From Selaginella moellendorffii (taxonomy: Eukaryota; Plantae; Lycopodiophyta): a stretch of 64,000 nt of DNA. Positions 4,164 to 32,505 of this stretch are shown in pieces. Numbering within the stretch: position 1 is the stretch's first letter; every line of letters starts with the position of its first letter. The translations under genes and the position numbers were made by a program. The notes under the pieces were generated by a model. That model was not told the DNA's origin and did not search any database. It worked only from the letters and a program-made list of their open reading frames with translations. The stretch lies in contig NW_003314345.1 of the NCBI RefSeq assembly GCF_000143415.4, positions 762,574-826,573 of the forward strand, written 5' to 3'.

Positions 4164-4831
4164 ACTATCATCAGAACCAATCGATGTGCTCTTCCTCCTC
4201 TTCTCCGCCTTGAAAATGGATGAGCGCGCTGGCTAGATTGACTGCGTGAAATGGATCAACGCGCCTTTGACCCTGCACTGTATATGAAAAAGTAGTCGGC
4301 AGTCGTACAATACGTATAAAACAATATTGGGCTTGGCATTACCTTCGCATTATCCCCCTCTTTGCGAGCCAACGAAGATCTGAGAACGTACACTGACAAT
4401 CTGGAAAACCAACAAACGAAAATACAAAGATTGGAGAAAACTTGGCCTGAAACATATACATGAAACCTTACACTCACCTGTAGTTACAGTGAACCTCGAA
4501 TCGGTCGTAATTCTCATGACCGAGATCTAGGAGGGCCTTCTCCAGAAGCACGATCGTCACGAGGATTGATTCATCGGTCTTGAAGTAACTGCCGGACTCT
4601 GAAAAGAGAAGCAAGTTTTAAGAACCGAACAAGCGAAGGCGAACAGGAAAAGTAAAGACGTGCCTGAAAGCTTTACCTGAGTCCTTGTCGGTTAGAAAAA
4701 AGTAAGGAAAAGAAAAAGAGAAAAGCTCACACCTATGAGCTTTTCTCATAGCTCATCTATGTGGTGCTCTTTTTTCACTCCGAATAGATAGCGATTGATC
4801 AGAAGTTTCATAGTGCAGGCTTTGTGATCCT

Positions 4832-4971
4832 TGTGGTATTATGAAACGGTGTTGTGTTATTATTATGACGGTTGATACATGGTTAAATGTATGGGTTTAT
4901 CGTGACGATCCGTGGCGGCGTCTGGATCGCTCACGTGGCTGTGTGCTGACGTGGTCTTGTTCACTCCCACA
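4832..4971 (-). repeat. Copia 3' LTR (140 bp)
   Basis: Identical by eye to 17013-17152. Adjacent purine tract GAGGAGGAG on the minus strand. Confidence 0.95.
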
Positions 4972-7880
4972 CTCCTCCTCAAGGCCAACGTCTAAAGTCA
5001 GCCCAAGAGCCTTCGTGAAGACTTCATGTTTAACACGAGGAAGTGGTTTTGTTAGCACGTCCGCTAGCATGGAGTTTGTCGGGCAGAACTCCAGCTCGAT
5101 CATTCCTCTCTGGATCTGCTCTCGTATAAAATGGAAGCGCAGCTCAATGTGTTTAGTACGAGAGTGGAACCTGGAGTTCTTGGTCAAAGCTATTGCAGAC
5201 TGGTTGTCACACAATAGCTTGACCACGCCCGTGTTGATTTGTAGATCCTGGAGAAGTCCCTTCAGCCACGCTGCTTCCTTGGTTGCAGCTGCTGCAGCTA
5301 TGTACTCAGCCTCGGTACTCGACATTGCTGTAATAGCCTGTCGTTTGCTGCACCAGCTTGCGACATTTCCATTTAGCAGGAAAACGTAGCCTGTGGTTGA
5401 CTTCCTGTTGTCTGGATCCCCGGCCCAATCAGCATCAGAGTAACCAGCCAGCTTGTTGCCGCTCTCGCCTCTGGAGTACTTTAAAGTTAGCTGGTTAGTC
5501 CCTGCCACGTACCTCATAATACGTTTCAAAGCCTGCCAGTGTGCTGTGGAGGGACGGTCCAGGTACTTCGCCACTGTTCCCACAGCATACGCAAGGTCAG
5601 GCCGAGTGGAGATTACCAGGTAGATCAGGCTGCCGACCATAGAGCGATAGACTGCTCTAGATGCTTTCTCCTCCTCGGGAGATTGATCAAGGTACTCTCC
5701 ACTCTCAGCAGATAATTTCGTGCCTGTTTCCATGGGAGTAGCAACCGGATTAACATGAGCAAGGCCATACCTCTGGAGCACGTCGGAAACATATTTTGCC
5801 TGGCTTAGCTCCAGAGTGCCTCGTTCCCTGTTGCGCGTCACCTGGATACCGAGGCAGAAATGCAACTCACCGAGGTCTTTCATGGCAAATTTAGCGCCAA
5901 GGTACGTTTTAAATTTGTGGATCAAACGTAGCTGATTTGCCACGAGAATAGCATCGTCCACATATAGCGCAAGGAACAAATAGCCCTCAGCGTCAAAATA
6001 TATGTAGAGGTTACAATCAGCAGCACTGCGCACGAAACCAAGGGAAATTAGAAAAGAATCTATTTTCGTGTACCATTGGCGTGGCGACTGCTTGAGTCCG
6101 TAGAGAGCTTTGTTAAGCTTGCAAACGAGGTGTTCTTCTCCAGGCTGGATAAAACCAGGAGGCTGAGCCACATACACCTCTTCATCGATGTCGCCGTTAA
6201 GGAACGCAGTGCAAACGTCAAGTTGATGGAGCTCGAGATCCAATTCTGCAGCTAAGATTAGTAGCATACGAATGGTTGTGAGTTTCACCACCGGGCTGTA
6301 AGTCTCCGAGTAGTCCAGCCCATGAACTTGAGAAAATCCGCGTGCCACAAATCTCGCCTTGTAGCGCTCAATGCTTCCATCAGCGTTGTACTTTTTCTTA
6401 AACAACCACTTGGATGAGACGAGCTTTCTGCGAGCTGGAAGTTCAACCAGCGACCAAGTGTTGTTTTTCTGGAGAGAATCATACTCCTCCTGCATAGCTG
6501 CCTGCCAGTGTTCAGCTTCTGGTCCATGTAGAGCCGCTTGGGGACCGAGAGAGGCAGGTGGAGCCGACAGAGCCCAGAAGTAGGCACGCTTTCCTATAGG
6601 CATCGCCTCCTTGGCTTTAAGAGATGGTTTCACGACACGACCCAAGCGTGTCACCACTGCTGTGCCGGCTGGAGGAGGTGGTAGCTTGGGAATGCTGGGA
6701 GGAGTGGTGGCATCTTGATATAACTCGTCGCCAACGAACAGGTCAGCCACAAGCGTGGAAAGATCTGGCTGTTCATTGGTGCTTGAGGATGCAGCCGCTG
6801 TGGCCTGTGGAGTCGTCAGAGGAGGTGTCGAAGGAAGAGAAGTACCGTGATCAGCTCCTCCTGCCAGACCGCCTCCTTCGGGCGCTCCTTCAGCAACTCC
6901 TCCTGGCTCTGCAGCGGCTGGATTGTCTGGTGCTGGGTGGAGATGTGGAACGTCGTCCAAAATCTCAGAAAGATCCACCAGAGATGGTGGAGAAACAGGA
7001 GGGAGTCTCAGGGTATCTCGATAAAGACGAGCTTCATCAAACACCACATCTCGGCTCACCACCAGTTTCCTGCGCTGGCAGTTATAGAGTCGATAGGCTT
7101 TTACCTGGGTGTGATAACCCATGAAGATGCATTTCTCGCTCTTGGGATCCAGCTTCCGCCGCTGAACATTGGGAATGTGGGCGTAGGCTATGCAACCAAA
7201 CACCCTCAAGTGCCCTAACTTGGGGCGCTTCCCAGTCCATACTTGAAACGGCACCTGTCCTGTGGAACGTGTTGGCAGCCGGTTCCGGAGATACACTGCT
7301 GTGTTGAGTGCCTCTCCCCAAAACACCTTGGGCATGCCAGCGTGCTGGAGAAGGCAGCGTACACAGTCCATAAGTGTCCTGTTCAGGCGCTCGGCGACCC
7401 CATTCTGCTGCGAGGTGTGGGCTGCGGTGTACTCGTGGTGGATGCCAGCCTGAGCAAGAAATGCCAGAAACTCCTTGCTCATATACTCACCGCCGCCATC
7501 TGAACGTAGTGTCCGGATGGTACAGCCAGTGGCATTTTCTGCCCAGCTTTTGTAGACCTGGAAGTGATGGTAGACCTCTCCCTTGTGTGCCATGCGAACA
7601 GCCACCGCATAGCGTGAGTAGTCGTCAATGAACGAAACGAAGTACCGCTTGTGACTGAGAGTTGCTTCTGGCACATGGCACACATCCGTGTGTACCAGCT
7701 GAAGAAATCCTGAGGCGCCATCTTCTGGACTTCTGCATGGAAAGGGTAGTCTTGGCTGCTTCCCCAGTTGGCACGTCTCACATACTCCCAGTTGGCTGGC
7801 ACCGGTGAGGGTAAAATCATCAGCAAGCTTGTGGCTAGCAAGTAGCTGGATGTCGTGAGAATTGGCATGCCCTAGCCGAG
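4897..7880 (-). CDS. Copia pol, 3' part (integrase, reverse transcriptase, RNase H)
   Basis: ARLGH...CETC zinc finger, LVHTDV, SDGGGEY, QQNGVAER, YKARFVARGFSQ, LYVDD, YSDADWAG, SSTEAEY, ADVLTK. ORF runs through the PPT into the LTR. Confidence 0.95.
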
Positions 7881-7885
7881 CGTGC

Positions 7886-9606
7886 TGTGAGACACAAAAT
7901 CCCTAGGCCCCAAAGTGGAGCCGGAAGGGCGCCACATGGTAGTGGCCAAAGCGAGAGCCAAACGAGCGCAACACGTTTGGACCAAAAGCTCCAACTTGAA
8001 AAGTCAAGAGCGGGAGTGGAACTCCCAACGAAGTGCTCGAGGAACGAGCACAAAGCGAGCAAAAGGCAAGGCTCCAAAAAGGGACCCAAAAGGACCAACA
8101 CATGACACGTGGGAGTGTCCGAGATGGAGTCCGAAGTGGAGTCCGAGGTGGACCCGAGATGGACCCGAGTTGGAGTCCGAAGTGGAGTCCGAGATGGAGT
8201 CCGAGGTGGACCCGAGATGGACCCGAGTTGGAGTCCAAAGTGGAGTCCGAGATGGAGTCCGAGGTGGACCCGAGATGGACCCGAGCTGGAGTCCGAAGTG
8301 GAGTCTGAGATGGACCCGAGATGGAGTCCGAGATGGAGTCCGAGATGGAGTCTGAGGTGGACCCGAGATGGACCCGAAATGGAGTCCGAGATGGAGTCTG
8401 AGATGGACCCGAGATGGAGTCCAAGATGGAGTCCGAAGTCAAGACCGAGACCGGGACCGAGACCGAGACCGAGACTGAGATCGGGACCGAGACCGAGACC
8501 GAGGCCGAGGCCGAGACCGAGCCCGAGCCCGAGTCCGAGTCCGAATCCGAGTCCGAGTCCGAGTCCGAGTCCGAGTCCGAGTCCGAGTCCGAGTCCGAGT
8601 CCGGAGCCTGAGAGGGTGAAAGCCCAAAGCGTTCGTCTCCCAGACCCTGGGGGGTTTGGTGAGCTCCAAAAGTATAGTAGGGGAAGGACTGCAGTGGAGC
8701 CAGTTTGGCCAGGAAAGGCCAGTTTGGCCCAGGAAGGCCAGACCCAGTGTTGGGTGATGAGCTGCCCACTGGGAAGTCCAAGACTAGAGTGAACACAGAC
8801 CGACAAGCGGGGTGGCTTGGTGAAGTGTTCAAGAGCCAGCTCTAGTTCCCCCGGGAGATCGACTGGCCGATGCTCCCAGTCCAAGTGTGGGTGGCACTAC
8901 CTACTTGGATACCTGGTGTGGCTCAACGGAACCCGCTCTAAGCCCATGGCTAGAGCACCCAAGGGCAGAAGGCGAGGAGAGTACCCAGGTGGCTCGCGTA
9001 AGGCCACGGTGTTCCGAAATGTTGTCCCAAAGGCCTAGACTGTGGAAAGGAAGAGGAGCAGTCCTTTGGGGTAGTGACCAAGGACACAGTCGTGTGGTGA
9101 GGAAGTCCCAGAGGACTGTGGGACTTAGTGGTCGGGCCTGTGGGTCTCGATCCAGTGGTAGTGTTGGCAAACACGGCCAGGGGCAGAAAGGGACTTAGTG
9201 GGGACTGACAAAGGGATATTGGGGAAGGCTATTCCCCTTGTCGGTGGGCATCCTAAGGATGCTAAGGAGTGGATCTGAGATGACCACTCACGGATGGTTT
9301 GCCTAGTCTTGGGGAGCCAAGACTGTGATGCAAGTGGTATTGGACTACCAGTGTGGCAAAGGTGATTGGGCATGGCCTTAGCGTAACGGGCTGCTATGTC
9401 GGTGGTACCTTTGAGTGTCGGTCATGGGATCGGACACGTGGAGCACTTGGACCAAGTGCAAATGTTGAGTGGCATGGATGCCGTTCTCGGGGCTAGCAAA
9501 TCCCAAGTCCTGGATTGGACTTATGGAGGTTGTGAATGAGACTCCTCCAAGTGGTCGGAGGTGTGGTTAAGTGACTAAAGTAGAATGGAAAATTTAGTCG
9601 CTTACA
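7886..9606 (+). repeat. 5' LTR of nested element
   Basis: Direct repeat at offset 5,783. Six substitutions seen versus the 3' LTR (7964, 8399, 8601, 9401, 9459, 9500). Confidence 0.95.
8112..8605 (+). repeat. Hexamer-based tandem array inside the 5' LTR (GAGTCC/GAGATG/GACCC/GAGACC/GAGCCC)
   Basis: Visible 6-, 11- and 12-bp units. Source of the low-complexity SD/GL/RT ORFs in the track. Confidence 0.9.
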
Positions 9607-9609
9607 ATT

Positions 9610-9621
9610 TGGTATCGGAGC
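9610..9621 (+). promoter_or_regulatory. Primer-binding site (tRNA-iMet type) of nested element
   Basis: TGGTATCGGAGC 3 nt after the LTR end, one mismatch from canonical TGGTATCAGAGC. Confidence 0.9.
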
Positions 9622-11722
9622 TGTTCCTTAGTCCGACTTTTATTGGTGCTCAAGTATATCACCACTAGTGTTGGCATCGGAAGGTCCGAGGAGTGGGCCT
9701 ATCCTTGAGGAGTAGCAAGTCTGGAAGACATGGCTCTCCATTACAGTTCATGTGTGAACTTGTAGACGAGGTGGTGGATAGAAAAGGGCCAATAATGGAA
9801 CGACTTTGGGATCTTGGGAACAGTGCAAGGTTTTCCTCATTGAGTTGAGGATGTGATCTGGATGAGCATTTGTCTCAGCAAATTGGCTTAGGTTGTTGTG
9901 GTAAACAACTAAAGTTGGGATCACGGGAAAGATAGAGACTCCAAAACAATAAAGGAGTCACAAGATTATCCTCATATAGTTGAGGTTGGTGCTCATGAAT
10001 GTGAGACCAAAGGTAATGACCGTGGAAGGTCAAATACGGAAGAGGACTCAAGTCCTTGAAATGGTAGCCGGGGCTACCTCTAATAAATGCTGGAACAACC
10101 CAAGGAGTTGGGGGTGTATTAAGTGGATGAGTTGGTATTCTCATCACATGGACAAGTAGTCCTAAGGGGCAAAGGTTGCCCCCAGAGAACAAAATCAAGT
10201 GTCGGAGTAACACTTTTGAAAATAGTCCTTTTGAGTAGGACAGGAATGCAATAAGTGTATTCCAGTGAGCTAGTGCCTCACAAGTAGGACCTTACGAGTC
10301 TGTGGATTGACCAAGTCCAAAACTGCTGGATGACTCAAGTAGAGTCAACGGATGGTCCTAAAAAGGACTGAATGAAGCATTTGGACTGAGGTGCGTTGTA
10401 CCCCACAAAGGATGGGGGGGGATCATAGGATCCAAGGATGAGAACAGAGAGTATCTCATCGATGGCAAAATGTGCCATGCTAAAGTTATAGGAAAGGTGT
10501 TCCCAGAAGAAAACAACTTTGACATGAAGTTGTGTGTGACCTCTATGGGGCAGTGCTAACAGATGGTTGGCATGAAAAAGAGCGGTGTTGGTCTTGGCAA
10601 AGACTTAGACACGAATGGAAATGTCATAGAGGTAGGCTCGTGGAGCCGATAGTGTGGAGACACCAAATGTGCCAAGGTGTGATACCTTGAGGCTATGTTG
10701 GTGGGTTCATGAGAACCCCTTGCCAAAGGAATCCCAATGGAAATGGGAATGGCATAGCCTAAGCTGCAGAGCATGCAGTTGGAGTGTGGTGACCCAGATA
10801 GTGATGGAGGTGTGAAAGCACCAAGTAATGAGTTGTAGGACTTGACAACTATGAGGCAACTAAGCAAGAGGTGCAAAATAACTGGTTAAATGGGTAGAAG
10901 GTAGCTACCCAAGACTTCTAGTATAGGGAAGTCGGATATACCCTTACGGGGGATAAGTTGCTTATGTTGCGATATAGTAAGTCAATGTCATAAAAGGAAA
11001 TACTCATTGTCAAGAAAGCCATCATTGGGACACCCGAACACTCTAGAACACCAGAAGGTGGTGTTTGATGTCGCGAGGGCAATGGATAAAGCCCAAGGGA
11101 CTAAGTCCCTAGCGAATGATGGATAGAAGGTGCTATCCAAATGTCCAAGGTTGCGGAGACAGGAGAGGACTGTCTACCCAAGTTGGACAAAGCCAAAAAT
11201 GGAATTTTGGCAAGGCTAGTGATGGGCATGTAAAGGCCCATAAGCAACAATGTAACCCCAGTGTGTGGGATTATAAGCTGAGCATACCCGGATTGAGGAA
11301 CCACTCCCTGGGCTATTGGGTAGGTTCATCCCTAAGAATACTTGCTAAGGCATGATAGAAAGTGCAAAGCTATCCTCCTGGTCTGGAGGAGAATGACCGA
11401 AGGAAAGGTGTGAAGCCAAAGGCAAGTAGTGTTGGGATGGAACTAAACCATAGAAATCAAAGGGCATATCCAACAGTGGTTATGAAAGTTGGGAGTGGAG
11501 AATCAAGAGGGTGCTCAAGGATGTTGTTGCTAGCAACCGTGATGCCATGGAGAGTCTAAAATATGGAATTGTCCATGTTAGACTATATGGCAACTATAAA
11601 GCTTGCGAAAGGGGAGGCCTTAGCAAGCTGAGGGACAGAGTTCCTTCAAGGTTCCCAAAGACGATTCTAGGTAGCGTAGTACCTAAAAAGGCCAAGTGTA
11701 AATGGTTCATGGAACGTGCGAA

Positions 11723-11749
11723 ATCAGAGTGGCGCAGCAGGAGCGTGGT
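11723..11749 (+). other. Fragment matching the 5' 27 nt of plant initiator tRNA-Met (contains Pol III A box); not a full tRNA
   Basis: ATCAGAGTGGCGCAGCAGGAGCGTGGT versus recalled plant tRNA-iMet ATCAGAGTGGCGCAGCGGAAGCGTGGT: 25/27, first 16 exact. Confidence 0.75.
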
Positions 11750-12143
11750 CTTGAAGCTTGCCATGAGGCAAGGTTATCAAGGTTAGGGAAGTAGTTCCCG
11801 AGTGTTCAAAGAGAGGGCTTTGAACGAAAGTCGATGGTCAAGGACTTTCACGCTTATGCAGGAACCATGTTACAATGGTCGGAGGACTTGCCAAGTGAGA
11901 TTGGCACGTCGGGGGAACAAAGACCCTAGTTGAAGGTGATATCTTCAAAAAGGGTGGGCCAGGGGGCCGAGCATGGAGGAGTCCATACATGATCACAGAC
12001 ATGTCAAGTGAGAGGACTTGGCAGTGTGGAGGAACTAGGTTCCTAAGCTGTGATCTGTAGCGCGCTTTAAAAATAGGTTGGTGCACCGGCGTGGGGAGTC
12101 ACGCCAGGCATCTAGCGTGATGCCGTCCGTAGATGCATATACG

Positions 12144-12200
12144 GAGGTTGGGTTCGAGTCCCGACCCTCTAGTGCTTGGGTTCGAGTCCCAAATCACTAG
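12144..12200 (+). other. Two tandem tRNA T-arm-like hairpins / Pol III B-box motifs
   Basis: GGGTTCGAGTCCC at 12150-12162 and 12178-12190, each in a longer stem (GGTTGGG..CCCGACC; CTAGTG-C-TTGGG..CCCAA-AT-CACTAG). Confidence 0.7.
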
Positions 12201-13668
12201 GGCGTGGTGATGGTTTGGAATATGAGGACACTCATATTTCGGTGGTCATGGACTCTCAGTGGGGAGACTGGTTTGGGCACACCGCCAAGCGAGGGATGCC
12301 TCGGAGTCGTGATGCACGGTTAGATTGCTTAGTGTGAAAGCTCGGCATATCTAACTTGAACGCTTTGGTGCAAGTGGCACCAAGGTCGTGGTGAGTGAGA
12401 TGGGGACACCTAATCTCAGTTGCTATGAACCCTTGGCCGTAAGGGCTAGCTTGGGTGCACCACCAAGTGTGGGGGATGCCCCCGGGGTTATAGTCAACAA
12501 CTTGGAGGTCTAGAAGACCAAGTACCTCTTGGCAACTCTGTTAAGGTGCCAAGGTGAGATCACTAGGTGATCTTATGGCCAGATAAGGACAAGGTCCTTG
12601 GTTTGCTAAGGAATGAAGTTCCTGGTTCAAAATGTTGAAATTGAACTGTTTAAGATGGTGTGGCTTGGTCGTGATGACCAAGTGGGAAGAGCACCTAAGG
12701 GAAATAAACTATGTCCGTCCGATGGCATAGTGAGTCCGAGGAAAGTAGTCTCTATAAAAGACCCATGGGAGGGTCACGAAGTTGGGCCATGGATAGAGCC
12801 CATAGCAGAATATGCTAAAGAGACATACTAGGGGTGAACATCCTCCGGACTTGGCAAAGAAGAGTCTTTGCTATGGAACCGAATGGATACCTCAAAAATG
12901 GAGGTAGCGATCCGATGTTGCTGGGTGCAACAATCAAGGATAGGAGCAAAGGACTAGTGGCCAAAGTTTGGGCCATGGAATTTAATGGAAGGGATCCAAA
13001 TGGCAAAGTTAGCCAAGGAACACTAATGTGTTCGATGCTAACAGCTTGTGGGAAAGGAAGCGGACTTTCAAGGATGGATTCCTAAGTGCTCCAATTTGGC
13101 GAAGTAAAGGCTCCAAGTGAGGGAGCGGTAAGGTAGCCAAATGATAGGGCCATGGACAGCCCTAGCACAAAGTATGATAAATGGAACTTAGTGCCCAAGG
13201 TGGCACGAAATAGAAGAGAGGATGATGGTGCCCTCAAGTAATGAACTTCCTAGGATAGGGAAGTGGAGTTGCACAATCTGTGCAATGCAAGGTGTTGGAG
13301 ACACCTAGAAAATTGACTTCCAAAAAGTCAAAAGAGTAAAAGTTCCAAGGTGCAAACATTCAATAGATGGAAATTGAGACTATTCGAGAAGGAGTAGTGG
13401 GATTGACTTAGAGAAGGGTCTCTAAGAGGTTTAGCGAGAACTAAACCAATAAAAGGGGAGAACCATTACATGTGGTCCAATCAGTCTTTAAGTTGGAGAG
13501 ACTACGCTCCTTAAAGGATGGACAAGGCATGGTGAGCCTTTGATGTCAAACCATAGACAAAGATTGGCTAGGTGCCAAGGATGGAAATGGTAACACGTGT
13601 GGGTGTTACTTTATGAAAGGGTTTACCGTTCGATGAGGACATCGAACTTCGTCTATGGGTGGTGGAGT

Positions 13669-15389
13669 TGTGAGACACAAAATCCCTAGGCCCCAAAGTG
13701 GAGCCGGAAGGGCGCCACATGGTAGTGGCCAAAGCGAGAGCCAAACAAGCGCAACACGTTTGGACCAAAAGCTCCAACTTGAAAAGTCAAGAGCGGGAGT
13801 GGAACTCCCAACGAAGTGCTCGAGGAACGAGCACAAAGCGAGCAAAAGGCAAGGCTCCAAAAAGGGACCCAAAAGGACCAACACATGACACGTGGGAGTG
13901 TCCGAGATGGAGTCCGAAGTGGAGTCCGAGGTGGACCCGAGATGGACCCGAGTTGGAGTCCGAAGTGGAGTCCGAGATGGAGTCCGAGGTGGACCCGAGA
14001 TGGACCCGAGTTGGAGTCCAAAGTGGAGTCCGAGATGGAGTCCGAGGTGGACCCGAGATGGACCCGAGCTGGAGTCCGAAGTGGAGTCTGAGATGGACCC
14101 GAGATGGAGTCCGAGATGGAGTCCGAGATGGAGTCTGAGGTGGACCCGAGATGGACCCGAAATGGAGTCCGAGATGGAGTCCGAGATGGACCCGAGATGG
14201 AGTCCAAGATGGAGTCCGAAGTCAAGACCGAGACCGGGACCGAGACCGAGACCGAGACTGAGATCGGGACCGAGACCGAGACCGAGGCCGAGGCCGAGAC
14301 CGAGCCCGAGCCCGAGTCCGAGTCCGAATCCGAGTCCGAGTCCGAGTCCGAGTCCGAGTCCGAGTCCGAGTCCGAGTCCGAGTTCGGAGCCTGAGAGGGT
14401 GAAAGCCCAAAGCGTTCGTCTCCCAGACCCTGGGGGGTTTGGTGAGCTCCAAAAGTATAGTAGGGGAAGGACTGCAGTGGAGCCAGTTTGGCCAGGAAAG
14501 GCCAGTTTGGCCCAGGAAGGCCAGACCCAGTGTTGGGTGATGAGCTGCCCACTGGGAAGTCCAAGACTAGAGTGAACACAGACCGACAAGCGGGGTGGCT
14601 TGGTGAAGTGTTCAAGAGCCAGCTCTAGTTCCCCCGGGAGATCGACTGGCCGATGCTCCCAGTCCAAGTGTGGGTGGCACTACCTACTTGGATACCTGGT
14701 GTGGCTCAACGGAACCCGCTCTAAGCCCATGGCTAGAGCACCCAAGGGCAGAAGGCGAGGAGAGTACCCAGGTGGCTCGCGTAAGGCCACGGTGTTCCGA
14801 AATGTTGTCCCAAAGGCCTAGACTGTGGAAAGGAAGAGGAGCAGTCCTTTGGGGTAGTGACCAAGGACACAGTCGTGTGGTGAGGAAGTCCCAGAGGACT
14901 GTGGGACTTAGTGGTCGGGCCTGTGGGTCTCGATCCAGTGGTAGTGTTGGCAAACACGGCCAGGGGCAGAAAGGGACTTAGTGGGGACTGACAAAGGGAT
15001 ATTGGGGAAGGCTATTCCCCTTGTCGGTGGGCATCCTAAGGATGCTAAGGAGTGGATCTGAGATGACCACTCACGGATGGTTTGCCTAGTCTTGGGGAGC
15101 CAAGACTGTGATGCAAGTGGTATTGGACTACCAGTGTGGCAAAGGTGATTGGGCATGGCCTTAGCGTAACGGGCTGCTATGTCAGTGGTACCTTTGAGTG
15201 TCGGTCATGGGATCGGACACGTGGAGCACTTGGACCAAGTGTAAATGTTGAGTGGCATGGATGCCGTTCTCGGGGCTAGCAAGTCCCAAGTCCTGGATTG
15301 GACTTATGGAGGTTGTGAATGAGACTCCTCCAAGTGGTCGGAGGTGTGGTTAAGTGACTAAAGTAGAATGGAAAATTTAGTCGCTTACA
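13669..15389 (+). repeat. 3' LTR of nested element (tandem array at about 13895-14388)
   Basis: Direct repeat of 7886-9606, followed by TSD CGTGC. Confidence 0.95.
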
Positions 15390-16743
15390 CGTGCCAGAGC
15401 TGGAGAGAGTTGGCAGCCCAGGAGCTGGGGCGAATTGCAAGCAAATGCCCCTGCTCGTGAGTTGAGAGGATCAACTGAGCATTGAGCTTGTAGAGAGTCT
15501 CAGCTCGTCTACCAAAAGCTACTGGATGGCCAGTCTCGTCAAAGATGGTGCATCCGTCTGCATTGAAGAGTGTTGAGAAGCCTTGATCTGCTGCTACACC
15601 GACTGAGAACACTGTCTGTCCTGCTTCTGGTACGTAGTAGACCTGGTTCACGAGCTTCTCAGCTCCACTCTCCAACTTTATGATGACCGTTCCTTGTCCT
15701 TCCACTGTTAAGGGGCGTTTGTCTCCTACAAAGACTTGCTTTTCTTGCTCCAGTGGCCGGTACTTGTGAAAAGCTCTCTTCAATGGTGTGAGGTGCATCG
15801 AGGCTCCAGAATCCATCCAGAGCACTTCGGCTTCGGACACAGTGGATGAAGATGCAGCGAGCGTCATCATCAACATCGTGTCAGGTTGGCGTGAAGAAGA
15901 GCTTCTTTCAGCGTGAGCTTTCTCTGCGGCTTTCTTGATCCGGCATTCACGCTCCACGTGGCCAGCTTTGCCGCAGTAGTTACATGGGCCCTTGCGTTTT
16001 TTATTGGTTGCAAATCCAGGGCTGGGAGAAGGGCTCTTTTGTCCTCGAACAGGGCCATCTCGTTTCTTCCCACCCGATTGCTTTCCCATGATCAAGGCCT
16101 GCTCCACCCGAGCAGCCTGAGAGGGCGCCTTTTGTCTCCGCTCGTTCTGCTTTCGTTCTTCCTCGATCAGGTCCGAGTAGAGCGAGTCCAAGTCCTTTCC
16201 AGGTACAGCCGAGAGCATCGATGCGAAAGGTTGGAGATCAGGGGAGACAGAGCTCAGAAGGAATGCCTTAGCTTGGTCAAAGGTGATTGCCGCTTCCGCG
16301 TCCTTCAGCTCGCTGATCATCGCTTTAAACTTTCCAATGTAAGTGGCCATGGTGTCATCAGGTTGCATTCTCATCGTGAAGAACCTTTGTGTTAGCACCA
16401 CCTTAGCATTGGCAGCTTTGGCAGCGAAGATTTGTGTAAGGGATGTCCAGTTCTGGTGGGCTGTTTTGGTAAGATCAAGGAGATGAACGAATTCATCCCC
16501 AAGACCTAACCCGATGACAGAGAGCGCTTTTCGATTCTTGGAGTCCCAGTCGAGCCGTTGGGTTACATCCGCAGCAGCCGGACGTTGAGTCGTTCCATCC
16601 ACTATAGGCCAGCAGTCCTTGGCCAAAAGGATAAGCTGTACTTTTGTTTTCCAAGTGGAGAAATTCTGTCCCGTGAACTTTTGGAGAAGTTTCTCCCAGC
16701 CCCCAGAGTCCCAAGAATTTCCTGCTGCGTTAGCAGAAGACAT
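15390..16743 (-). CDS. Copia gag-protease, 5' part of the interrupted gag-pol
   Basis: FTGQNFSTWK gag start, CNYCGKAGHVEREC zinc knuckle, WMDSGASMH protease. Ends at LQLWH at the insertion point. Confidence 0.95.
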
Positions 16744-16780
16744 TCTATCTATTAATCTAAGAATAGATTAAACAGAGAAT

Positions 16781-16987
16781 TTAGAAAGGACGGCGTGGAG
16801 AAGAATCGTGAAAAACTCGGCCGCAACAAGGGCACACCTTCCGGCAGGCTGGGCAAAGAGCTTGTTGGCGCTTTCGCTCCTGGATCTTCCGCTCCACCCG
16901 CGCCAGCACTGCCAAAGCCCTCGCGCGCTCCTGAGCCAAGGGTTCCTGGCCCCTTTGATTTTTCATCTGCCACTGTCCTCTGGCCAT
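16781..16987 (-). CDS. Putative 68-aa upstream ORF in the Copia leader with a CxxC-x3-CxxC motif
   Basis: ATG 13 nt after the PBS. Basic helical stretch followed by LCPACRKVCPCCGRVF. Confidence 0.35.
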   Translation of the reverse strand: MARGQWQMKNQRGQEPLAQERARALAVLARVERKIQERKRQQALCPACRKVCPCCGRVFHDSSPRRPF

Positions 16988-17000
16988 TAGATCGTTCGCT

Positions 17001-17012
17001 GCTCCGATACCA
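17001..17012 (-). promoter_or_regulatory. Copia primer-binding site (tRNA-iMet type)
   Basis: Plus-strand GCTCCGATACCA abutting the LTR. Confidence 0.9.
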
Positions 17013-17152
17013 TGTGGTATTATGAAACGGTGTTGTGTTATTATTATGACGGTTGATACATGGTTAAATGTATGGGTTTATCGTGACGATCCGTGGCGGC
17101 GTCTGGATCGCTCACGTGGCTGTGTGCTGACGTGGTCTTGTTCACTCCCACA
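17013..17152 (-). repeat. Copia 5' LTR (140 bp)
   Basis: Identical by eye to 4832-4971, followed by TSD ATCCT. Confidence 0.95.
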
Positions 17153-19944
17153 ATCCTCCACTGGTATTCTCCAGCAGCAGGATCGTGGACAGCATCCCAA
17201 TCCATCGTGAGAGTACCGAATTCCGAGTAGCATCTGTCTTGAACTGTGGAAACAGCCAAACATCGCTCGAGTCTGAAAAGATAAAAATGTTAGAGAAAAC
17301 GATGGAAGAACAAAGACGTGCCAGGATTTTGCCGCGACAGATTTTCCAACAACCTGTCGAATCGAAGAACCAATAGAAAGGAAAGGCTCGTAGCTTGCCA
17401 AGATGCGTTTATCCTCGCAAGGTACACGAGATCTGGCCATGATATCGAACAGCAGAAAAGAAGCGATCTACTCACCGAGGCGCAGGCGCTCGAAATCCGG
17501 TAGCGCATTCACAAGGCGCTCAACCCCGCCGCTGCTGCTGCGAGAAAGATCCATAAACCCTAGCTCGTGCCCCGGCATATTCTCTTTTTTGAAATGATTC
17601 TTAGAATATTCAATTTTAGGCGTACCGTTAATCCTTTAATTTTCTGGTAAGCTTAAAGCATTCGCACTGCATGCTCACGGATTTATTCGATTCCATAGAA
17701 ATTCAAGCTTGTACATGAGGTCGTGTCCTCCGACATCATCGGATAAAAAACAGTGCCATACATCTGTGTTCTAGGCGAGGAATTATGGAAATGTGAAACA
17801 ACACGGATGGATCGCGAGAAAAAGCCAAGATTCAATAACAAAAGGATATTCTCTTTGAGCTTTCAGGGCATCACAGAACAATATGTAGACAGCAATTTCT
17901 ACCAGATTACTTATTTGATTTAGTAGCACTATGCTGCTGAGGGCGCTTGCTATCTTTGCAAGTCTCATGCCCCCAACCAGCAATACTGCTTGTTTCCTGG
18001 CATAAGTTTTCCGACCAGTACACAGCAAATGCCGCGACCAGGCACCTGCGACCTTAGGTCTGATTTGTAGTGTGAGAATGACAGGGGGCGGGGGGGGGGG
18101 GGGGGGGGGGCGGCGCTATTATTTCTATCCTAAGAGAAATAGCTATTGACCTCAAACACTCGCCCTAGAAACGGCCATGGCAGGCCATTAGCTACTTTCA
18201 TAAAATGGGCAAAAATGAGTACACAACCTCATCTCCTACATACAATGTGGTTTTGGGCACATGCCACGTGGTGGCACTGGAAAGAGAATTTTCTTTATAG
18301 CCATTTTTTGAGAAAGTATAGTTATAAATGAAAACTATAAATAGAGCTTCATGTGGATATATTTGTGTATTGTGCTACTTTAAAATCCACAAATATCTTT
18401 ATATTCGTGTGGATCTATTTGTGGATTTTAAAGTAGCACAATATTTATCACAGATTGTTGTAGAAATATTTCCATGTCAATTGCATCTACATGAAGCTCT
18501 TTTGTTCAATATTTTCTTCCTAGATTATTAAAAAAATACATTAGTGTCAAGATCTATCAATAACTAAATATCAACTTGAGTGTTTGTTTTGCCATAACAT
18601 ACAAGCATTTATAAAACTTATTATAATATGTCTAAACTTGTTGGCATAGTGAATTTTTCATTGAGCTCTATCACTATTTTTGAATGTGATCAATACTTTT
18701 TAGTAGTTGAACAATCATAACTGTTGAATGCCATAATTGTATTTCTCACAATATACACAAAGCTACACTAAAAAGAAATAGGTTGATTCAATTTTTATTT
18801 TTTCTTGAATTGGAAGGTAAACTAGCTCATGAGCAATTATAATTGTCATAACCATTCCACATCATAACCTCTTTAATATTGGATAAGTTTACCCCAACAA
18901 TCACATAGTTTCCCACAAAAAATATAATGTCCCAAATTTTCAATTCAAAACGGGAAAATGAATATACCCATCTAATACCCAAGACATGATCCTCAAAAGT
19001 CATCTGAAGGGCTTAAATGGGACATGCAGTCACTACAAAAGAATGAAACATGGATCCATCTGCTGCAGAATCCACTTACACTGATACAGCAGATCTCGTG
19101 ATTGTTCCAAACAAGCCATTCAACATCAACCCGATACCCTGCAAGCAAGGACAGAAGGTCTTGCCATCCGATGCTTCTTCAACCAATGAATAAAGGTGGA
19201 GGAGTCGCATTGGCGAGCCATGAAATGCCATATATCATGGCTGTTACTGTTTGTTCAGATCAGTACCCAGTTGTGAAACAAACGCTGATGCATTCACTGG
19301 CATCAAAAAGTTGGAGCACCCACTCCAGTTGATACGGGATTACTACCCTGTACACCATGCTTTCCAAATCAGAAACTAGATTCGTAAAAGGAAACAAACT
19401 AACTTGGGTGAGAACTATAAGAAGAAGTTCTGGCAGTCCAATTTCAATACATTTAGCTCCCTGGGAAAAGAAAGGAAAAAGTTCAGGGACAGCGACATTC
19501 AAATTGAAAGACATTGCGGGAATCCATACTCAAACAATCCAAGACCAACCAGAGCGGAGAACAACCAAGCCGAGAGGTCAGAACCCGTGCAAGCAAAAAG
19601 GAGACTCACTGGAGCAGAGTTCCCCAAAGCCCTCGAAAGCCAAGTACATTGATTTGTCGACGCACAAATCAATGCCCCCTGAATGTCTCAGAATCTCTGA
19701 AGATCAAGACAAAGGAAAAGAATGTTTTCACTTGAATGCGAAGAGAATAAAAACTTTCTGACCTCATGATCATCAAAGATAGAGCGAATTCACAATCCTC
19801 TAGATTGGAATAACATACGAGAAGGATGGATTCAAATTTATGTGAAATTGTTAGTAAGAAAAAGTTAATTGAGTTTTAAAAATTTCTATTTATAAACTAA
19901 AAGTCATTCTTTCTCTTAGATGAAAATTTTTCATAAATTTTTTT

Positions 19945-32199: not shown

Positions 32200-32505
32200 T
32201 GGAGAAATACGCTCACCTCTGCTTGGTGCCTCGCACCAGCCCTCTCTCAGCGCCTCTGCCAGAGCCTCCGGGCCGGTCTCTGCTCAATCACGCCCTAGCA
32301 CCTTGCGCAGTGCCAAATCTTGGCACCTCTCAGCCACGTCCGGGCATTGTCATCCTCGCTAGCCTCTTCAGCCAGCACCATCATCCCAGGATCTGGAGCC
32401 CCTCAGGGCTCCGATACCATGAAGAGATATGTGGAAGCTGTGATGTTATATATCGACTATCTTTCAAGTCATCTTTGTCCATCGTAGCGTCCGCATATCT
32501 CTTCA
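32200..32505 (-). mobile_element. Remnant of an LTR element with an 86-bp LTR (32420-32505) and tRNA-iMet PBS (32408-32419)
   Basis: GCTCCGATACCA abuts TGAAGAGATATGTGGA...TCCGCATATCTCTTCA (15/16 terminal inverted repeat). Left boundary approximate. Confidence 0.65.

What the first reader, a model, noticed from the sequence alone, without database searches (positions are those of the whole stretch)
11723..11749. Element carries a sense copy of the 5' end of its own primer tRNA (tRNA-iMet) 2.1 kb downstream of the PBS
Seen: ATCAGAGTGGCGCAGCAGGAGCGTGGT. Established (from recall): plant tRNA-iMet begins ATCAGAGTGGCGCAGCGGAAGCGTGGT, a 25/27 match, and the element's PBS is the iMet type. The match stops before the anticodon loop, so it is not a tRNA gene. 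ATCAGAG can sit in the loop of a TGCG/CGCA stem and is complementary to the tRNA 3' acceptor strand. Inference: captured by template switching during reverse transcription, and possibly kept as an auxiliary primer-docking site, a tRNA-fragment mimic or decoy, or a Pol III A box.
Basis: partly seen in the sequence, partly recalled or inferred. Interest (0 to 1): 0.8.

Follow-up and report, generated by a model that had tools for sequence, protein, structure and literature searches.

The report
Primer-tRNA fragment inside a spikemoss retrotransposon
A protein-less jumping element of the spikemoss Selaginella carries, in its non-coding middle, a 27-letter copy of the start of the initiator methionine tRNA that primes its own copying; it is most likely a fossil of a copying accident, and I found no sign that it does anything.

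Summary
Window 11723-11749 (+) matches 25 of 27 bases of tRNA-iMet positions 1-27, judged against real tRNA-iMet genes fetched with tools rather than recalled. The match starts at tRNA base 1 and ends two bases into the anticodon stem. It lies 2,113 bases downstream of an iMet-type PBS. The carrier is a young non-autonomous LTR element (7886-15389; LTRs 99.65% alike; TSD CGTGC) of Selaginella moellendorffii. Chance is unlikely: about 0.004 such matches are expected in the whole genome.

Both mismatches are transitions in the D-loop, and one is a CpG decay. No cloverleaf is present. The segment lies in a hairpin-poor gap of an interior otherwise built of about 90 short hairpins. Contigs from other samples, up to 13% diverged, span it without gaps, so it is old in the family. 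I could fetch no sister copy as sequence, so "more conserved than its flanks" stays untested. The host's own tRNA-iMet gene was not obtained either.

Best reading: a passively inherited relic of capture, probably by template switching onto a co-packaged primer tRNA. It cannot prime, because ACCA finds no partner. It is a poor Pol III unit, because the B-boxes lie 421 and 449 bases away. The scan noted the same feature on another piece of this genome.

The parts
11723..11749 (+). Sense copy of tRNA-iMet bases 1-27: acceptor 5' strand, bases 8-9, the whole D-arm, base 26 and the first two bases of the anticodon stem. It matches at 25 of 27 bases.
   Evidence: The mismatches at 11739 and 11741 both lie in the D-loop. 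The D-stem GCGC/GCGT is kept.
7886..9606 (+). 5' LTR (1,721 bp, TG...CA) of the non-autonomous LTR element.
   Evidence: Self-BLAST shows 99.65% identity to 13669-15389. TSD CGTGC lies at 7881-7885 and 15390-15394.
9610..9621 (+). Primer-binding site TGGTATCGGAGC, iMet type, 11 of 12 bases complementary to the canonical tRNA-iMet 3' end.
9607..13668 (+). Non-coding interior of 4,062 bp, built as a chain of short perfect hairpins.
   Evidence: No Pfam family in 10 ORFs. It holds 89 non-overlapping perfect hairpins, against 20.5 +/- 4.7 in shuffles and 22-37 elsewhere in the window.
11242..11756 (+). Hairpin-poor block of the interior. The tRNA-like 27-mer sits at its 3' edge, inside the 71-nt gap 11686-11756.
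   Evidence: The three largest hairpin-free gaps and the eighth largest all lie here (172, 131, 91 and 71 nt; median gap 20.5).
12144..12203 (+). Two tandem elongator-type T-arm hairpins (GGTTCGAGTCC, B-box consensus). The second is extended by a 6-8 bp stem, like an acceptor/T-arm minihelix. They are not iMet-type.
   Evidence: (fold z = -4.07). iMet T-loops read GATCGAAAC.
13669..15389 (+). 3' LTR, preceded by the purine-rich tract GGGTGGTGGAG.

Best explanation
The 27-mer is a genuine relic of the 5' third of initiator tRNA-Met. It entered the non-coding interior of an ancestor of this abundant Selaginella LARD-type element once and has been copied passively with it since.

Most likely route (inferred): during minus-strand DNA synthesis in the virus-like particle, reverse transcriptase left the element's RNA and copied a co-packaged tRNA-iMet from about base 28 to its 5' end. 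It then ran off and resumed on element RNA. That leaves a sense copy whose 5' boundary is tRNA base 1.

Shown: the tRNA identity, the orientation, the exact 5' boundary, the lack of a cloverleaf, and the presence of the segment in diverged copies. Inferred: the capture route and neutrality.
For: The match is 25 of 27 to tool-derived tRNA-iMet genes, starts at base 1 and is in sense orientation. Chance expectation is 0.0035 genome-wide.

Both differences are transitions. One is G>A in a CpG, in an interior whose CpG observed/expected ratio is 0.44. Divergence from the tRNA is 7%, the same order as the 4-13% between family copies. That fits unconstrained decay since the family arose.

The segment sits in a hairpin-free gap, at the edge of a 0.5-kb hairpin-poor block within a hairpin chain, as foreign sequence would.

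Contigs from two further samples, diverged by 4%, 5% and 13%, span the site with no gaps (table 8). The scan flagged the same feature on another piece of the genome.

The functional alternatives fail simple checks. There is no TGGT upstream to pair with ACCA. The B-boxes are 421 and 449 nt away. No RNA-seq reads cover the site.
Against: No sister copy could be aligned, so neutrality is not demonstrated. The variant table shows none of its 40 best-supported variants between 11181 and 11874, which would also fit constraint.

Mature tRNA-iMet is expected, from general knowledge, to carry m1G9 and m2,2G26, which hinder reverse transcriptases. Bases 9 and 26 are nevertheless copied correctly here. 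That argues mildly for an unmodified template, such as a gene, a precursor or DNA-level capture.

Two template switches are needed. The element's PBS has G where the 27-mer has A at the matching acceptor position, so the true host primer may differ from the sequence I compared.
Confidence: 0.55

Rival explanations
1. DNA-level or precursor-level origin. The fragment is what remains of a tRNA-iMet gene or pseudogene, or of a tRNA-derived SINE or TRIM, that was inserted into or recombined with the ancestral element and was then mostly lost.
For: Bases 9 and 26 are copied faithfully, although in mature tRNA they are expected to carry modifications that block reverse transcriptase (general knowledge). 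The upstream bases ...CGAA resemble the ...GAA/...CAA leaders of real iMet genes. S. moellendorffii has TRIMs with tRNA-like LTRs (Helenus-1_SMo, PMC10886601). Truncated iMet pseudogenes exist in plant DNA (L007, L102, L111, L118). Elongator-type T-arm motifs lie 0.4 kb away.
Against: Nothing beyond base 27 resembles iMet anywhere in the element on either strand; the best other alignment scores 11, below the shuffle mean of 14. There are no LTR-like or SINE-like boundaries around the fragment. The nearby T-arms are not iMet-type.
Confidence: 0.2
2. Selected cis-element on the element's RNA. The fragment would be a primer-tRNA mimic or decoy, comparable in idea to the HIV-1 tRNA-like element. 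It would bind a factor that recognises the acceptor/D-arm side of tRNA-iMet, or weakly dock the primer's 3' strand, and so help a protein-less parasite obtain primer or packaging.
For: The fragment is from the element's own primer tRNA, not a random one. The D-stem and a GG in the D-loop are kept, and both changes fall in the loop. It is retained in copies up to 13% diverged. Two minihelix-like T-arm hairpins lie downstream. The scan noted an iMet D-arm-like sense stretch in an unrelated TRIM (untested). HIV-1 gives a precedent for primer mimicry (PMC5113203, PMC5689005).
Against: The fragment is 2.1 kb from the PBS. Only 7 bp to the tRNA 3' strand are possible, with no pairing for ACCA. No cloverleaf or L-shape is possible, because the anticodon arm, T-arm and 3' strand are missing. 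The predicted structure around it is weak and unstable (centroid open). The divergence is compatible with neutral decay.
Confidence: 0.12
3. Internal Pol III promoter. The 27-mer would supply an A box (TGGCGCAGCAGG, 11730-11741) that works with the two B-box T-arm hairpins at 12151 and 12179, as in Cassandra/Helenus-type elements.
For: The A-box consensus TRGCNNARYNGG is intact despite the two changes. There are two perfect GGTTCGAGTCC motifs. No T4 run, the usual Pol III terminator, occurs on the + strand from 11206 to 15740; the probability of none in 2.46 kb is 0.006 by shuffling.
Against: The A-B spacing is 421-449 nt, against 30-60 nt in tRNA genes and SINEs (general knowledge). Without a terminator the transcript would exceed 4 kb, which is unlike Pol III products. 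In the known families the Pol III unit lies in the LTR (PMC10886601). RNA-seq gives no depth at the site, although small RNAs would be missed.
Confidence: 0.06
4. Chance resemblance in a purine-rich, hairpin-rich sequence.
For: The scan read thousands of windows and could have flagged a match to any small RNA, so the effective number of trials is large. One shuffle in 300 reached an alignment score of 20.
Against: The expected number of 25-of-27 matches to this tRNA in the whole 212.6-Mb assembly is 0.0035, and 4e-5 if anchored at base 1 in sense orientation. It is also the element's own primer tRNA.
Confidence: 0.04

Closest known systems
Helenus and Cassandra (TRIMp3): non-autonomous LTR retrotransposons carrying tRNA- or 5S-rRNA-derived sequence (Kojima 2024, PMC10886601). 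Helenus-1_SMo occurs in S. moellendorffii.
   Same: A protein-less LTR element of the same species class carries a piece of a small Pol III RNA gene that includes box-A-like sequence. That paper also found the tRNA-like part does not serve priming.
   Different: In Helenus and Cassandra the small-RNA sequence lies in the LTRs, spans boxes A and B at natural spacing, and the elements are miniature (LTR 120 bp, interior 85 bp in Helenus-1_SMo). Here it is only bases 1-27, lies in the interior of a 7.5-kb element, comes from the element's own primer tRNA, and has no B box within 400 nt.
HIV-1 tRNA-like element (TLE) next to the PBS (PMC5113203, PMC5689005)
   Same: A retroelement RNA carries a sense imitation of part of its own primer tRNA.
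   Different: The TLE imitates the anticodon arm and overall fold, lies beside the PBS, and its binding to LysRS is shown experimentally. This fragment is the acceptor-5'/D-arm part, lies 2.1 kb away, cannot adopt a tRNA fold, and has no binding data.
Extended primer contacts in yeast elements: Ty1 boxes pairing with the T and D arms, and the Ty3 bipartite PBS (PMC5371799; general knowledge)
   Same: Sequences outside the 12-18-nt PBS relate to tRNA-iMet.
   Different: Those sequences are complementary to the tRNA and pair with it. This one is the same sense as the tRNA and can pair only with the 7-nt 3' acceptor strand.
LARDs (large retrotransposon derivatives), long non-coding LTR elements moved by a helper
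   Same: Long LTRs, PBS, PPT, a 5-bp TSD, a 4-kb interior without coding capacity, very high copy number and recent activity.
   Different: The LARD label describes the carrier, not the finding. I know of no LARD reported with a primer-tRNA fragment or a hairpin-chain interior (from my own knowledge, plus the limited literature searches).
5' tRNA fragments (tRF-5) that act on transposon transcripts in plants (PMC5605234). A 19-nt iMet 5' fragment was sequenced in wheat (PMC5411081).
   Same: The same tRNA region (bases 1-19) exists as a small RNA in plants and is linked to transposon control.
   Different: A tRF targets complementary RNA. The element's sense RNA carries the same strand as the tRF, so only antisense transcripts could be targeted. 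Bases 17 and 19 are mismatched.

Membership tests
Functional tRNA-iMet gene | A complete cloverleaf with CAU anticodon, T-arm and 3' acceptor strand | tested here: not met
   ARAGORN finds 0 genes in the window. Rfam has no tRNA match at E<=10. The similarity ends at base 27, and no other iMet-like piece exists in the element.
tRNA-iMet-derived sequence (origin only) | Significant identity to authentic tRNA-iMet genes | tested here: met
   25 of 27 bases match the 5' end shared by 126 gene hits in 120 loci. The expected chance count is 0.0035 per genome.
tRNA-iMet-derived sequence (origin only) | Identity to the host's (S. moellendorffii) own tRNA-iMet | not testable with these tools
   No iMet gene lies in the window or in about 115 kb of other Selaginella DNA fetched. 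A scan note reports one with C64. The moss-type C64 variant has the same first 27 bases. All three PBS in the window read G where the canonical tRNA predicts A.
LARD / non-autonomous LTR retrotransposon | Two LTRs with TG...CA ends, a TSD, a PBS after the 5' LTR and a purine tract before the 3' LTR | tested here: met
LARD / non-autonomous LTR retrotransposon | A long interior without gag or pol | tested here: met
   No ORF exceeds 112 aa. No Pfam family scored significantly in 10 ORFs (two sub-threshold hits, E 0.18 and 0.39). The 91-aa ORF over the site has no homologue.
Helenus / Cassandra (TRIMp3) | The small-RNA-derived sequence lies inside the LTRs | tested here: not met
   The fragment is in the interior, 2.1 kb from the 5' LTR. 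The LTRs have no tRNA or 5S match.
Helenus / Cassandra (TRIMp3) | Boxes A and B (or A/IE/C) at gene-like spacing | tested here: not met
   The A-box-like motif is at 11730 and the B-box motifs are at 12151 and 12179, a spacing of 421 and 449 nt.
Retroviral tRNA-like element (HIV-1 TLE type) | Adjacent to the PBS and mimicking the primer's anticodon arm or global fold | tested here: not met
   It lies 2,113 nt from the PBS. The fragment stops before the anticodon loop. The local fold is weak.
Retroviral tRNA-like element (HIV-1 TLE type) | Binds the cognate synthetase or another tRNA-binding factor | not testable with these tools
   This needs a binding assay.
Auxiliary or bipartite primer-binding site | Complementary to the primer tRNA, including its 3' CCA end or its T/D arms | tested here: not met
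   The fragment is sense, not antisense. Only ATCAGAG can pair, with tRNA bases 66-72. The upstream bases are CGAA instead of TGGT.

The most novel reading that the evidence does not exclude
The interior of this protein-less element may be a platform of tRNA-part mimics: the 5' acceptor/D-arm third of its own primer tRNA-iMet plus two acceptor/T-arm-like minihelices 0.4 kb downstream. These would recruit tRNA-binding host or helper factors, such as the helper's Gag/RT that selects tRNA-iMet, or enzymes that recognise the tRNA top half. In that way the parasite RNA would be co-packaged with primer. This would be a plant analogue of HIV-1 tRNA mimicry, in a non-autonomous element.
Probability: 0.1. 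Interest if true: 0.75.

Novelty: new variant of a known kind. Interest (0 to 1): 0.33.

Why it matters
If it is only a fossil, it is a clean natural record that plant LTR-retrotransposon reverse transcriptases can copy their packaged primer tRNA as a template and stitch the product into the element. That is one way non-coding interiors of non-autonomous elements can be assembled from captured RNA. It also warns annotators that such elements seed tRNA-like fragments, and possibly apparent tRF loci, across a genome in thousands of copies.

If it were selected, it would be the first primer-tRNA mimic described in a plant retroelement. It would then bear on how elements with no proteins of their own compete for primer and packaging.

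Tried and rejected
Fetching sister copies as sequence failed by every route.
- The 91-aa ORF over the site has no homologue in the 5.8-billion-protein search.
- Exact-product look-ups of five TE ORFs found nothing: three element ORFs, the flanking copia gag, and the copia pol by homology, where the best hit is only 46% identical.
- An exhaustive HMMER search with a non-repetitive LTR ORF gave only a spurious repeat protein from another organism.
- The 27-mer is absent from IMG/VR.
- Five other Selaginella loci, reached through PPR paralogues and totalling about 115 kb, hold no copy and no iMet gene.

The one read-laying run showed the family is huge, but it printed only 40 of 753 variant positions, so no conservation profile could be built.

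Rejected readings:
- A coding origin for the stretch: no significant Pfam match, and the best atlas score is only 0.81, below the 0.9 lead level.
- An extension of the tRNA similarity into the following hairpin CTTGCC-ATGA-GGCAAG: its stem and loop sizes do not fit an anticodon arm.
- A hidden iMet 3' half elsewhere in the element.

The Gumbel extrapolation from shuffles (about 3e-4 per element) is looser than the exact count, because it pools alignments of any length. I rely on the exact count.

Full report

The sequence ATCAGAGTGGCGCAGCAGGAGCGTGGT is at window 11723-11749 on the + strand. It occurs once, even allowing three mismatches, and none of 100 shuffles produced a match.

I did not trust recall for the tRNA. 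I scanned public metagenome contigs with a pattern that allowed either base at the two disputed positions. All 126 hits in 120 loci carried GGAA there. ARAGORN typed the sampled loci as 72-nt tRNA-Met(CAT) genes. Their T-loop GATCGAAAC is, from my own knowledge, the initiator type.

The element matches bases 1-27 of these genes at 25 of 27 positions. The differences are at 11739 (A for G) and 11741 (G for A). The match starts at tRNA base 1 and ends two bases into the anticodon stem. No other part of the tRNA, on either strand, is detectable in the element. ARAGORN and Rfam find no tRNA there.

The exact expectation for a match this good is 1e-7 in the element and 0.0035 in the whole 212.6-Mb assembly. 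That counts any 27-nt window of this tRNA on either strand. Chance is therefore very unlikely, even allowing for the scale of the scan.

**2. What carries it?**

The carrier is an LTR retrotransposon at 7886-15389.
- Its LTRs are 1,721 bp long and 99.65% identical, with TG...CA ends.
- It has the 5-bp target duplication CGTGC.
- The PBS TGGTATCGGAGC is at 9610-9621, and a purine tract precedes the 3' LTR.

The 4,062-bp interior has no ORF above 112 aa and no significant Pfam match. It holds 89 non-overlapping perfect short hairpins, against 20.5 +/- 4.7 in shuffles.

The element is nested in a copia element on the minus strand, with gag at 15385-16743 and pol at 4897-7683.

Exact-protein look-ups place the window on scaffold GL377649.1 of GCA_000143415.2. 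Neighbouring paralogues carry the source name Selaginella moellendorffii. Earlier scan notes describe the same very abundant "hairpin-chain LARD" in this genome. I confirmed the hairpin excess myself.

**3. Family evidence**

Laying public data on 9500-13800 showed an enormous family: 93,119 contigs of one DNA run aligned at 80% identity or more.

Long pieces from two other samples cross the site without any gap:
- X4, 11529-11968, 18 differences.
- X4, 11423-11849, 57 differences, about 13% diverged.
- X15, 11633-11905, 14 differences.

The segment is therefore present in diverged copies and is old in the family. Independently, the scan holds a first-reader note of the same feature on another piece of the genome (s1-398925).

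None of the 40 printed best-supported variant positions lies between 11181 and 11874. However, 713 positions were not printed, so the test "more conserved than its flanks" could not be made. Every route to a sister copy as sequence failed.

**4. Anatomy and what it allows**

The fragment comprises the 5' acceptor strand, bases 8-9, the whole D-arm, base 26 and the first two bases of the anticodon stem.

Both differences lie in the D-loop and both are transitions. The first is G>A in a CpG, in an interior whose CpG observed/expected ratio is 0.44. Read another way, the D-loop AGCGGAA became AGCAGGA, which still fits the A-box consensus.

Divergence from the tRNA is 7%. That is of the same order as the divergence between family copies, so neutral decay since an early capture explains it.

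The 27-mer lies in a 71-nt hairpin-free gap (11686-11756). This gap is at the 3' edge of a 0.5-kb hairpin-poor block (11242-11756), in a chain whose median gap is 20.5 nt. Foreign sequence would look like this.

**5. Functional readings**

*Docking or priming.* Only ATCAGAG can pair with the tRNA, at bases 66-72. The bases upstream are CGAA, not TGGT, so the 3' ACCA end is unpaired and cannot be extended. The same 7 bp already exist within the tRNA itself.

*tRNA mimic.* The anticodon arm, T-arm and 3' strand are absent, so no tRNA fold is possible. The site is 2.1 kb from the PBS. This is unlike the HIV-1 tRNA-like element (PMC5113203, PMC5689005).

*Pol III A box.* The motif is intact, and two perfect B-box motifs exist at 12151 and 12179 inside stable T-arm-like hairpins. 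But they are 421 and 449 nt away, and they are elongator-type rather than iMet-type. The + strand has no T4 run from 11206 to 15740; the probability of none in 2.46 kb is 0.006. That is curious, but it would imply a transcript above 4 kb.

*Expression.* A 2026 RNA-seq run gave only 11 reads over 4.3 kb and none over the site. Small RNAs would not have been captured.

**6. Mechanism**

A sense copy cannot arise from plus-strand read-through of the primer, because that gives antisense tRNA next to the PBS (established reverse-transcription scheme). It requires the tRNA to serve as template during minus-strand synthesis, or else a DNA-level event.

I favour copy-choice onto a co-packaged tRNA-iMet with run-off at its 5' end. 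This explains the exact 5' boundary and the choice of tRNA.

Against it, bases 9 and 26 are expected to carry blocking methylations in the mature tRNA (general knowledge), yet they are copied correctly. Real iMet genes also have ...GAA leaders. Capture from a gene or precursor therefore keeps a sizeable share of probability.

**7. An unresolved point**

All three iMet-type PBS in the window, from three different elements, read TGGTATCGGAGC. The canonical tRNA predicts A at the eighth base. The 27-mer has the canonical A at the matching acceptor position.

Either Selaginella has an iMet variant with G4-C69, or a G-U pair is tolerated. In the first case the 27-mer's A would be a third difference, again a CpG>CpA transition. 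I could not fetch the host gene. A scan note reports one with C64 (s1-344485), and the C64 variant among my loci has the same first 27 bases.

**8. Comparison with what is known**

The nearest described systems are Cassandra and Helenus ("TRIMp3"). Helenus-1_SMo comes from this same species (PMC10886601). These elements have small-RNA-derived sequence with Pol III boxes inside the LTRs of miniature elements.

The present case differs in place (the interior), extent (one third of a tRNA), the size of the carrier, and the fact that the tRNA is the element's own primer. It fails the defining features of those families, of tRNA genes, of extended PBSs and of the HIV-1 TLE. It is a LARD by structure.

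**9. Verdict**

This is a real tRNA-iMet-derived fragment, most likely a passively inherited product of a capture event. No function is supported, and the decisive conservation test is still open. Interest is modest.

Noticed in passing
window 9607-13668: The interior is a chain of short perfect hairpins: 89 non-overlapping, with stems of 5 bp or more and loops of 3-9 nt, against 20.5 +/- 4.7 in shuffles and 22-37 in other window stretches. The + strand is purine-rich (A 30%, G 30%, T 23%, C 17%).
   Followed up: partly
window 12144-12203: Two tandem T-arm-like hairpins carry the exact B-box GGTTCGAGTCC. The second is flanked by the complementary arms CTAGTG...CACTAG, like an acceptor/T-arm minihelix. 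The surrounding 136 nt fold with z = -4.07. The T-loops are elongator-type, not iMet-type.
   Followed up: partly
window 11206-15740 (+ strand): No run of four or more T occurs over 4.5 kb, covering the rest of the interior and the whole 3' LTR. The stretch tested (11210-13668) holds 12 runs of A4 or more. By mono-shuffling, about 5 T4 runs are expected in 2.46 kb, and the probability of none is 0.006.
   Followed up: partly
window 9610-9621 (+), 17001-17012 (-), 32408-32419 (-): Three different LTR elements all have the PBS TGGTATCGGAGC, with G where the canonical plant tRNA-iMet predicts A. This suggests a Selaginella iMet variant with G4-C69, or a tolerated G-U pair.
   Followed up: partly
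window 4829-17159 (- strand): The LARD is nested inside a copia element. Its gag (15385-16743; Retrotran_gag_2) and its integrase-RT ORF (4897-7683; rve, RVT_2) are split by the insertion.
   Followed up: partly
L123:4408-4478 and on to about 10900 (GL377623.1): A decayed element has an LTR end and PBS like the LARD's (74-84% identity; ttacaatt + TAGTATCAGAGC) but an unrelated interior, with a chromodomain about 6 kb downstream. A contig loose end at window 9621 in run X4 continues with a similar non-LARD sequence. Together these suggest a chromovirus helper or sibling lineage that shares the LTR end and PBS.
   Followed up: partly
window 8046-8663 and 13829-14434: The LTRs contain nested tandem repeats of 12-nt and 58-nt periods. 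These create long low-complexity ORFs (GLGL..., SDSD..., PRPR...) and a weak, sub-threshold Rfam MIR2933 match.
   Followed up: no
PMC5411081, table of 'novel miRNAs': The wheat 'novel miRNA' tae-N11 (19 nt) is identical to bases 1-19 of tRNA-iMet. It is therefore a 5' tRNA fragment rather than a miRNA.
   Followed up: no
L007, L102, L111, L118 (metagenome loci): These loci hold truncated or internally deleted tRNA-iMet copies. Some keep bases 1-38 or 1-42 followed by unrelated sequence. Others have the body deleted between the anticodon arm and the 3' acceptor strand. They show that iMet pseudogene fragments occur in plant-associated DNA.
   Followed up: no
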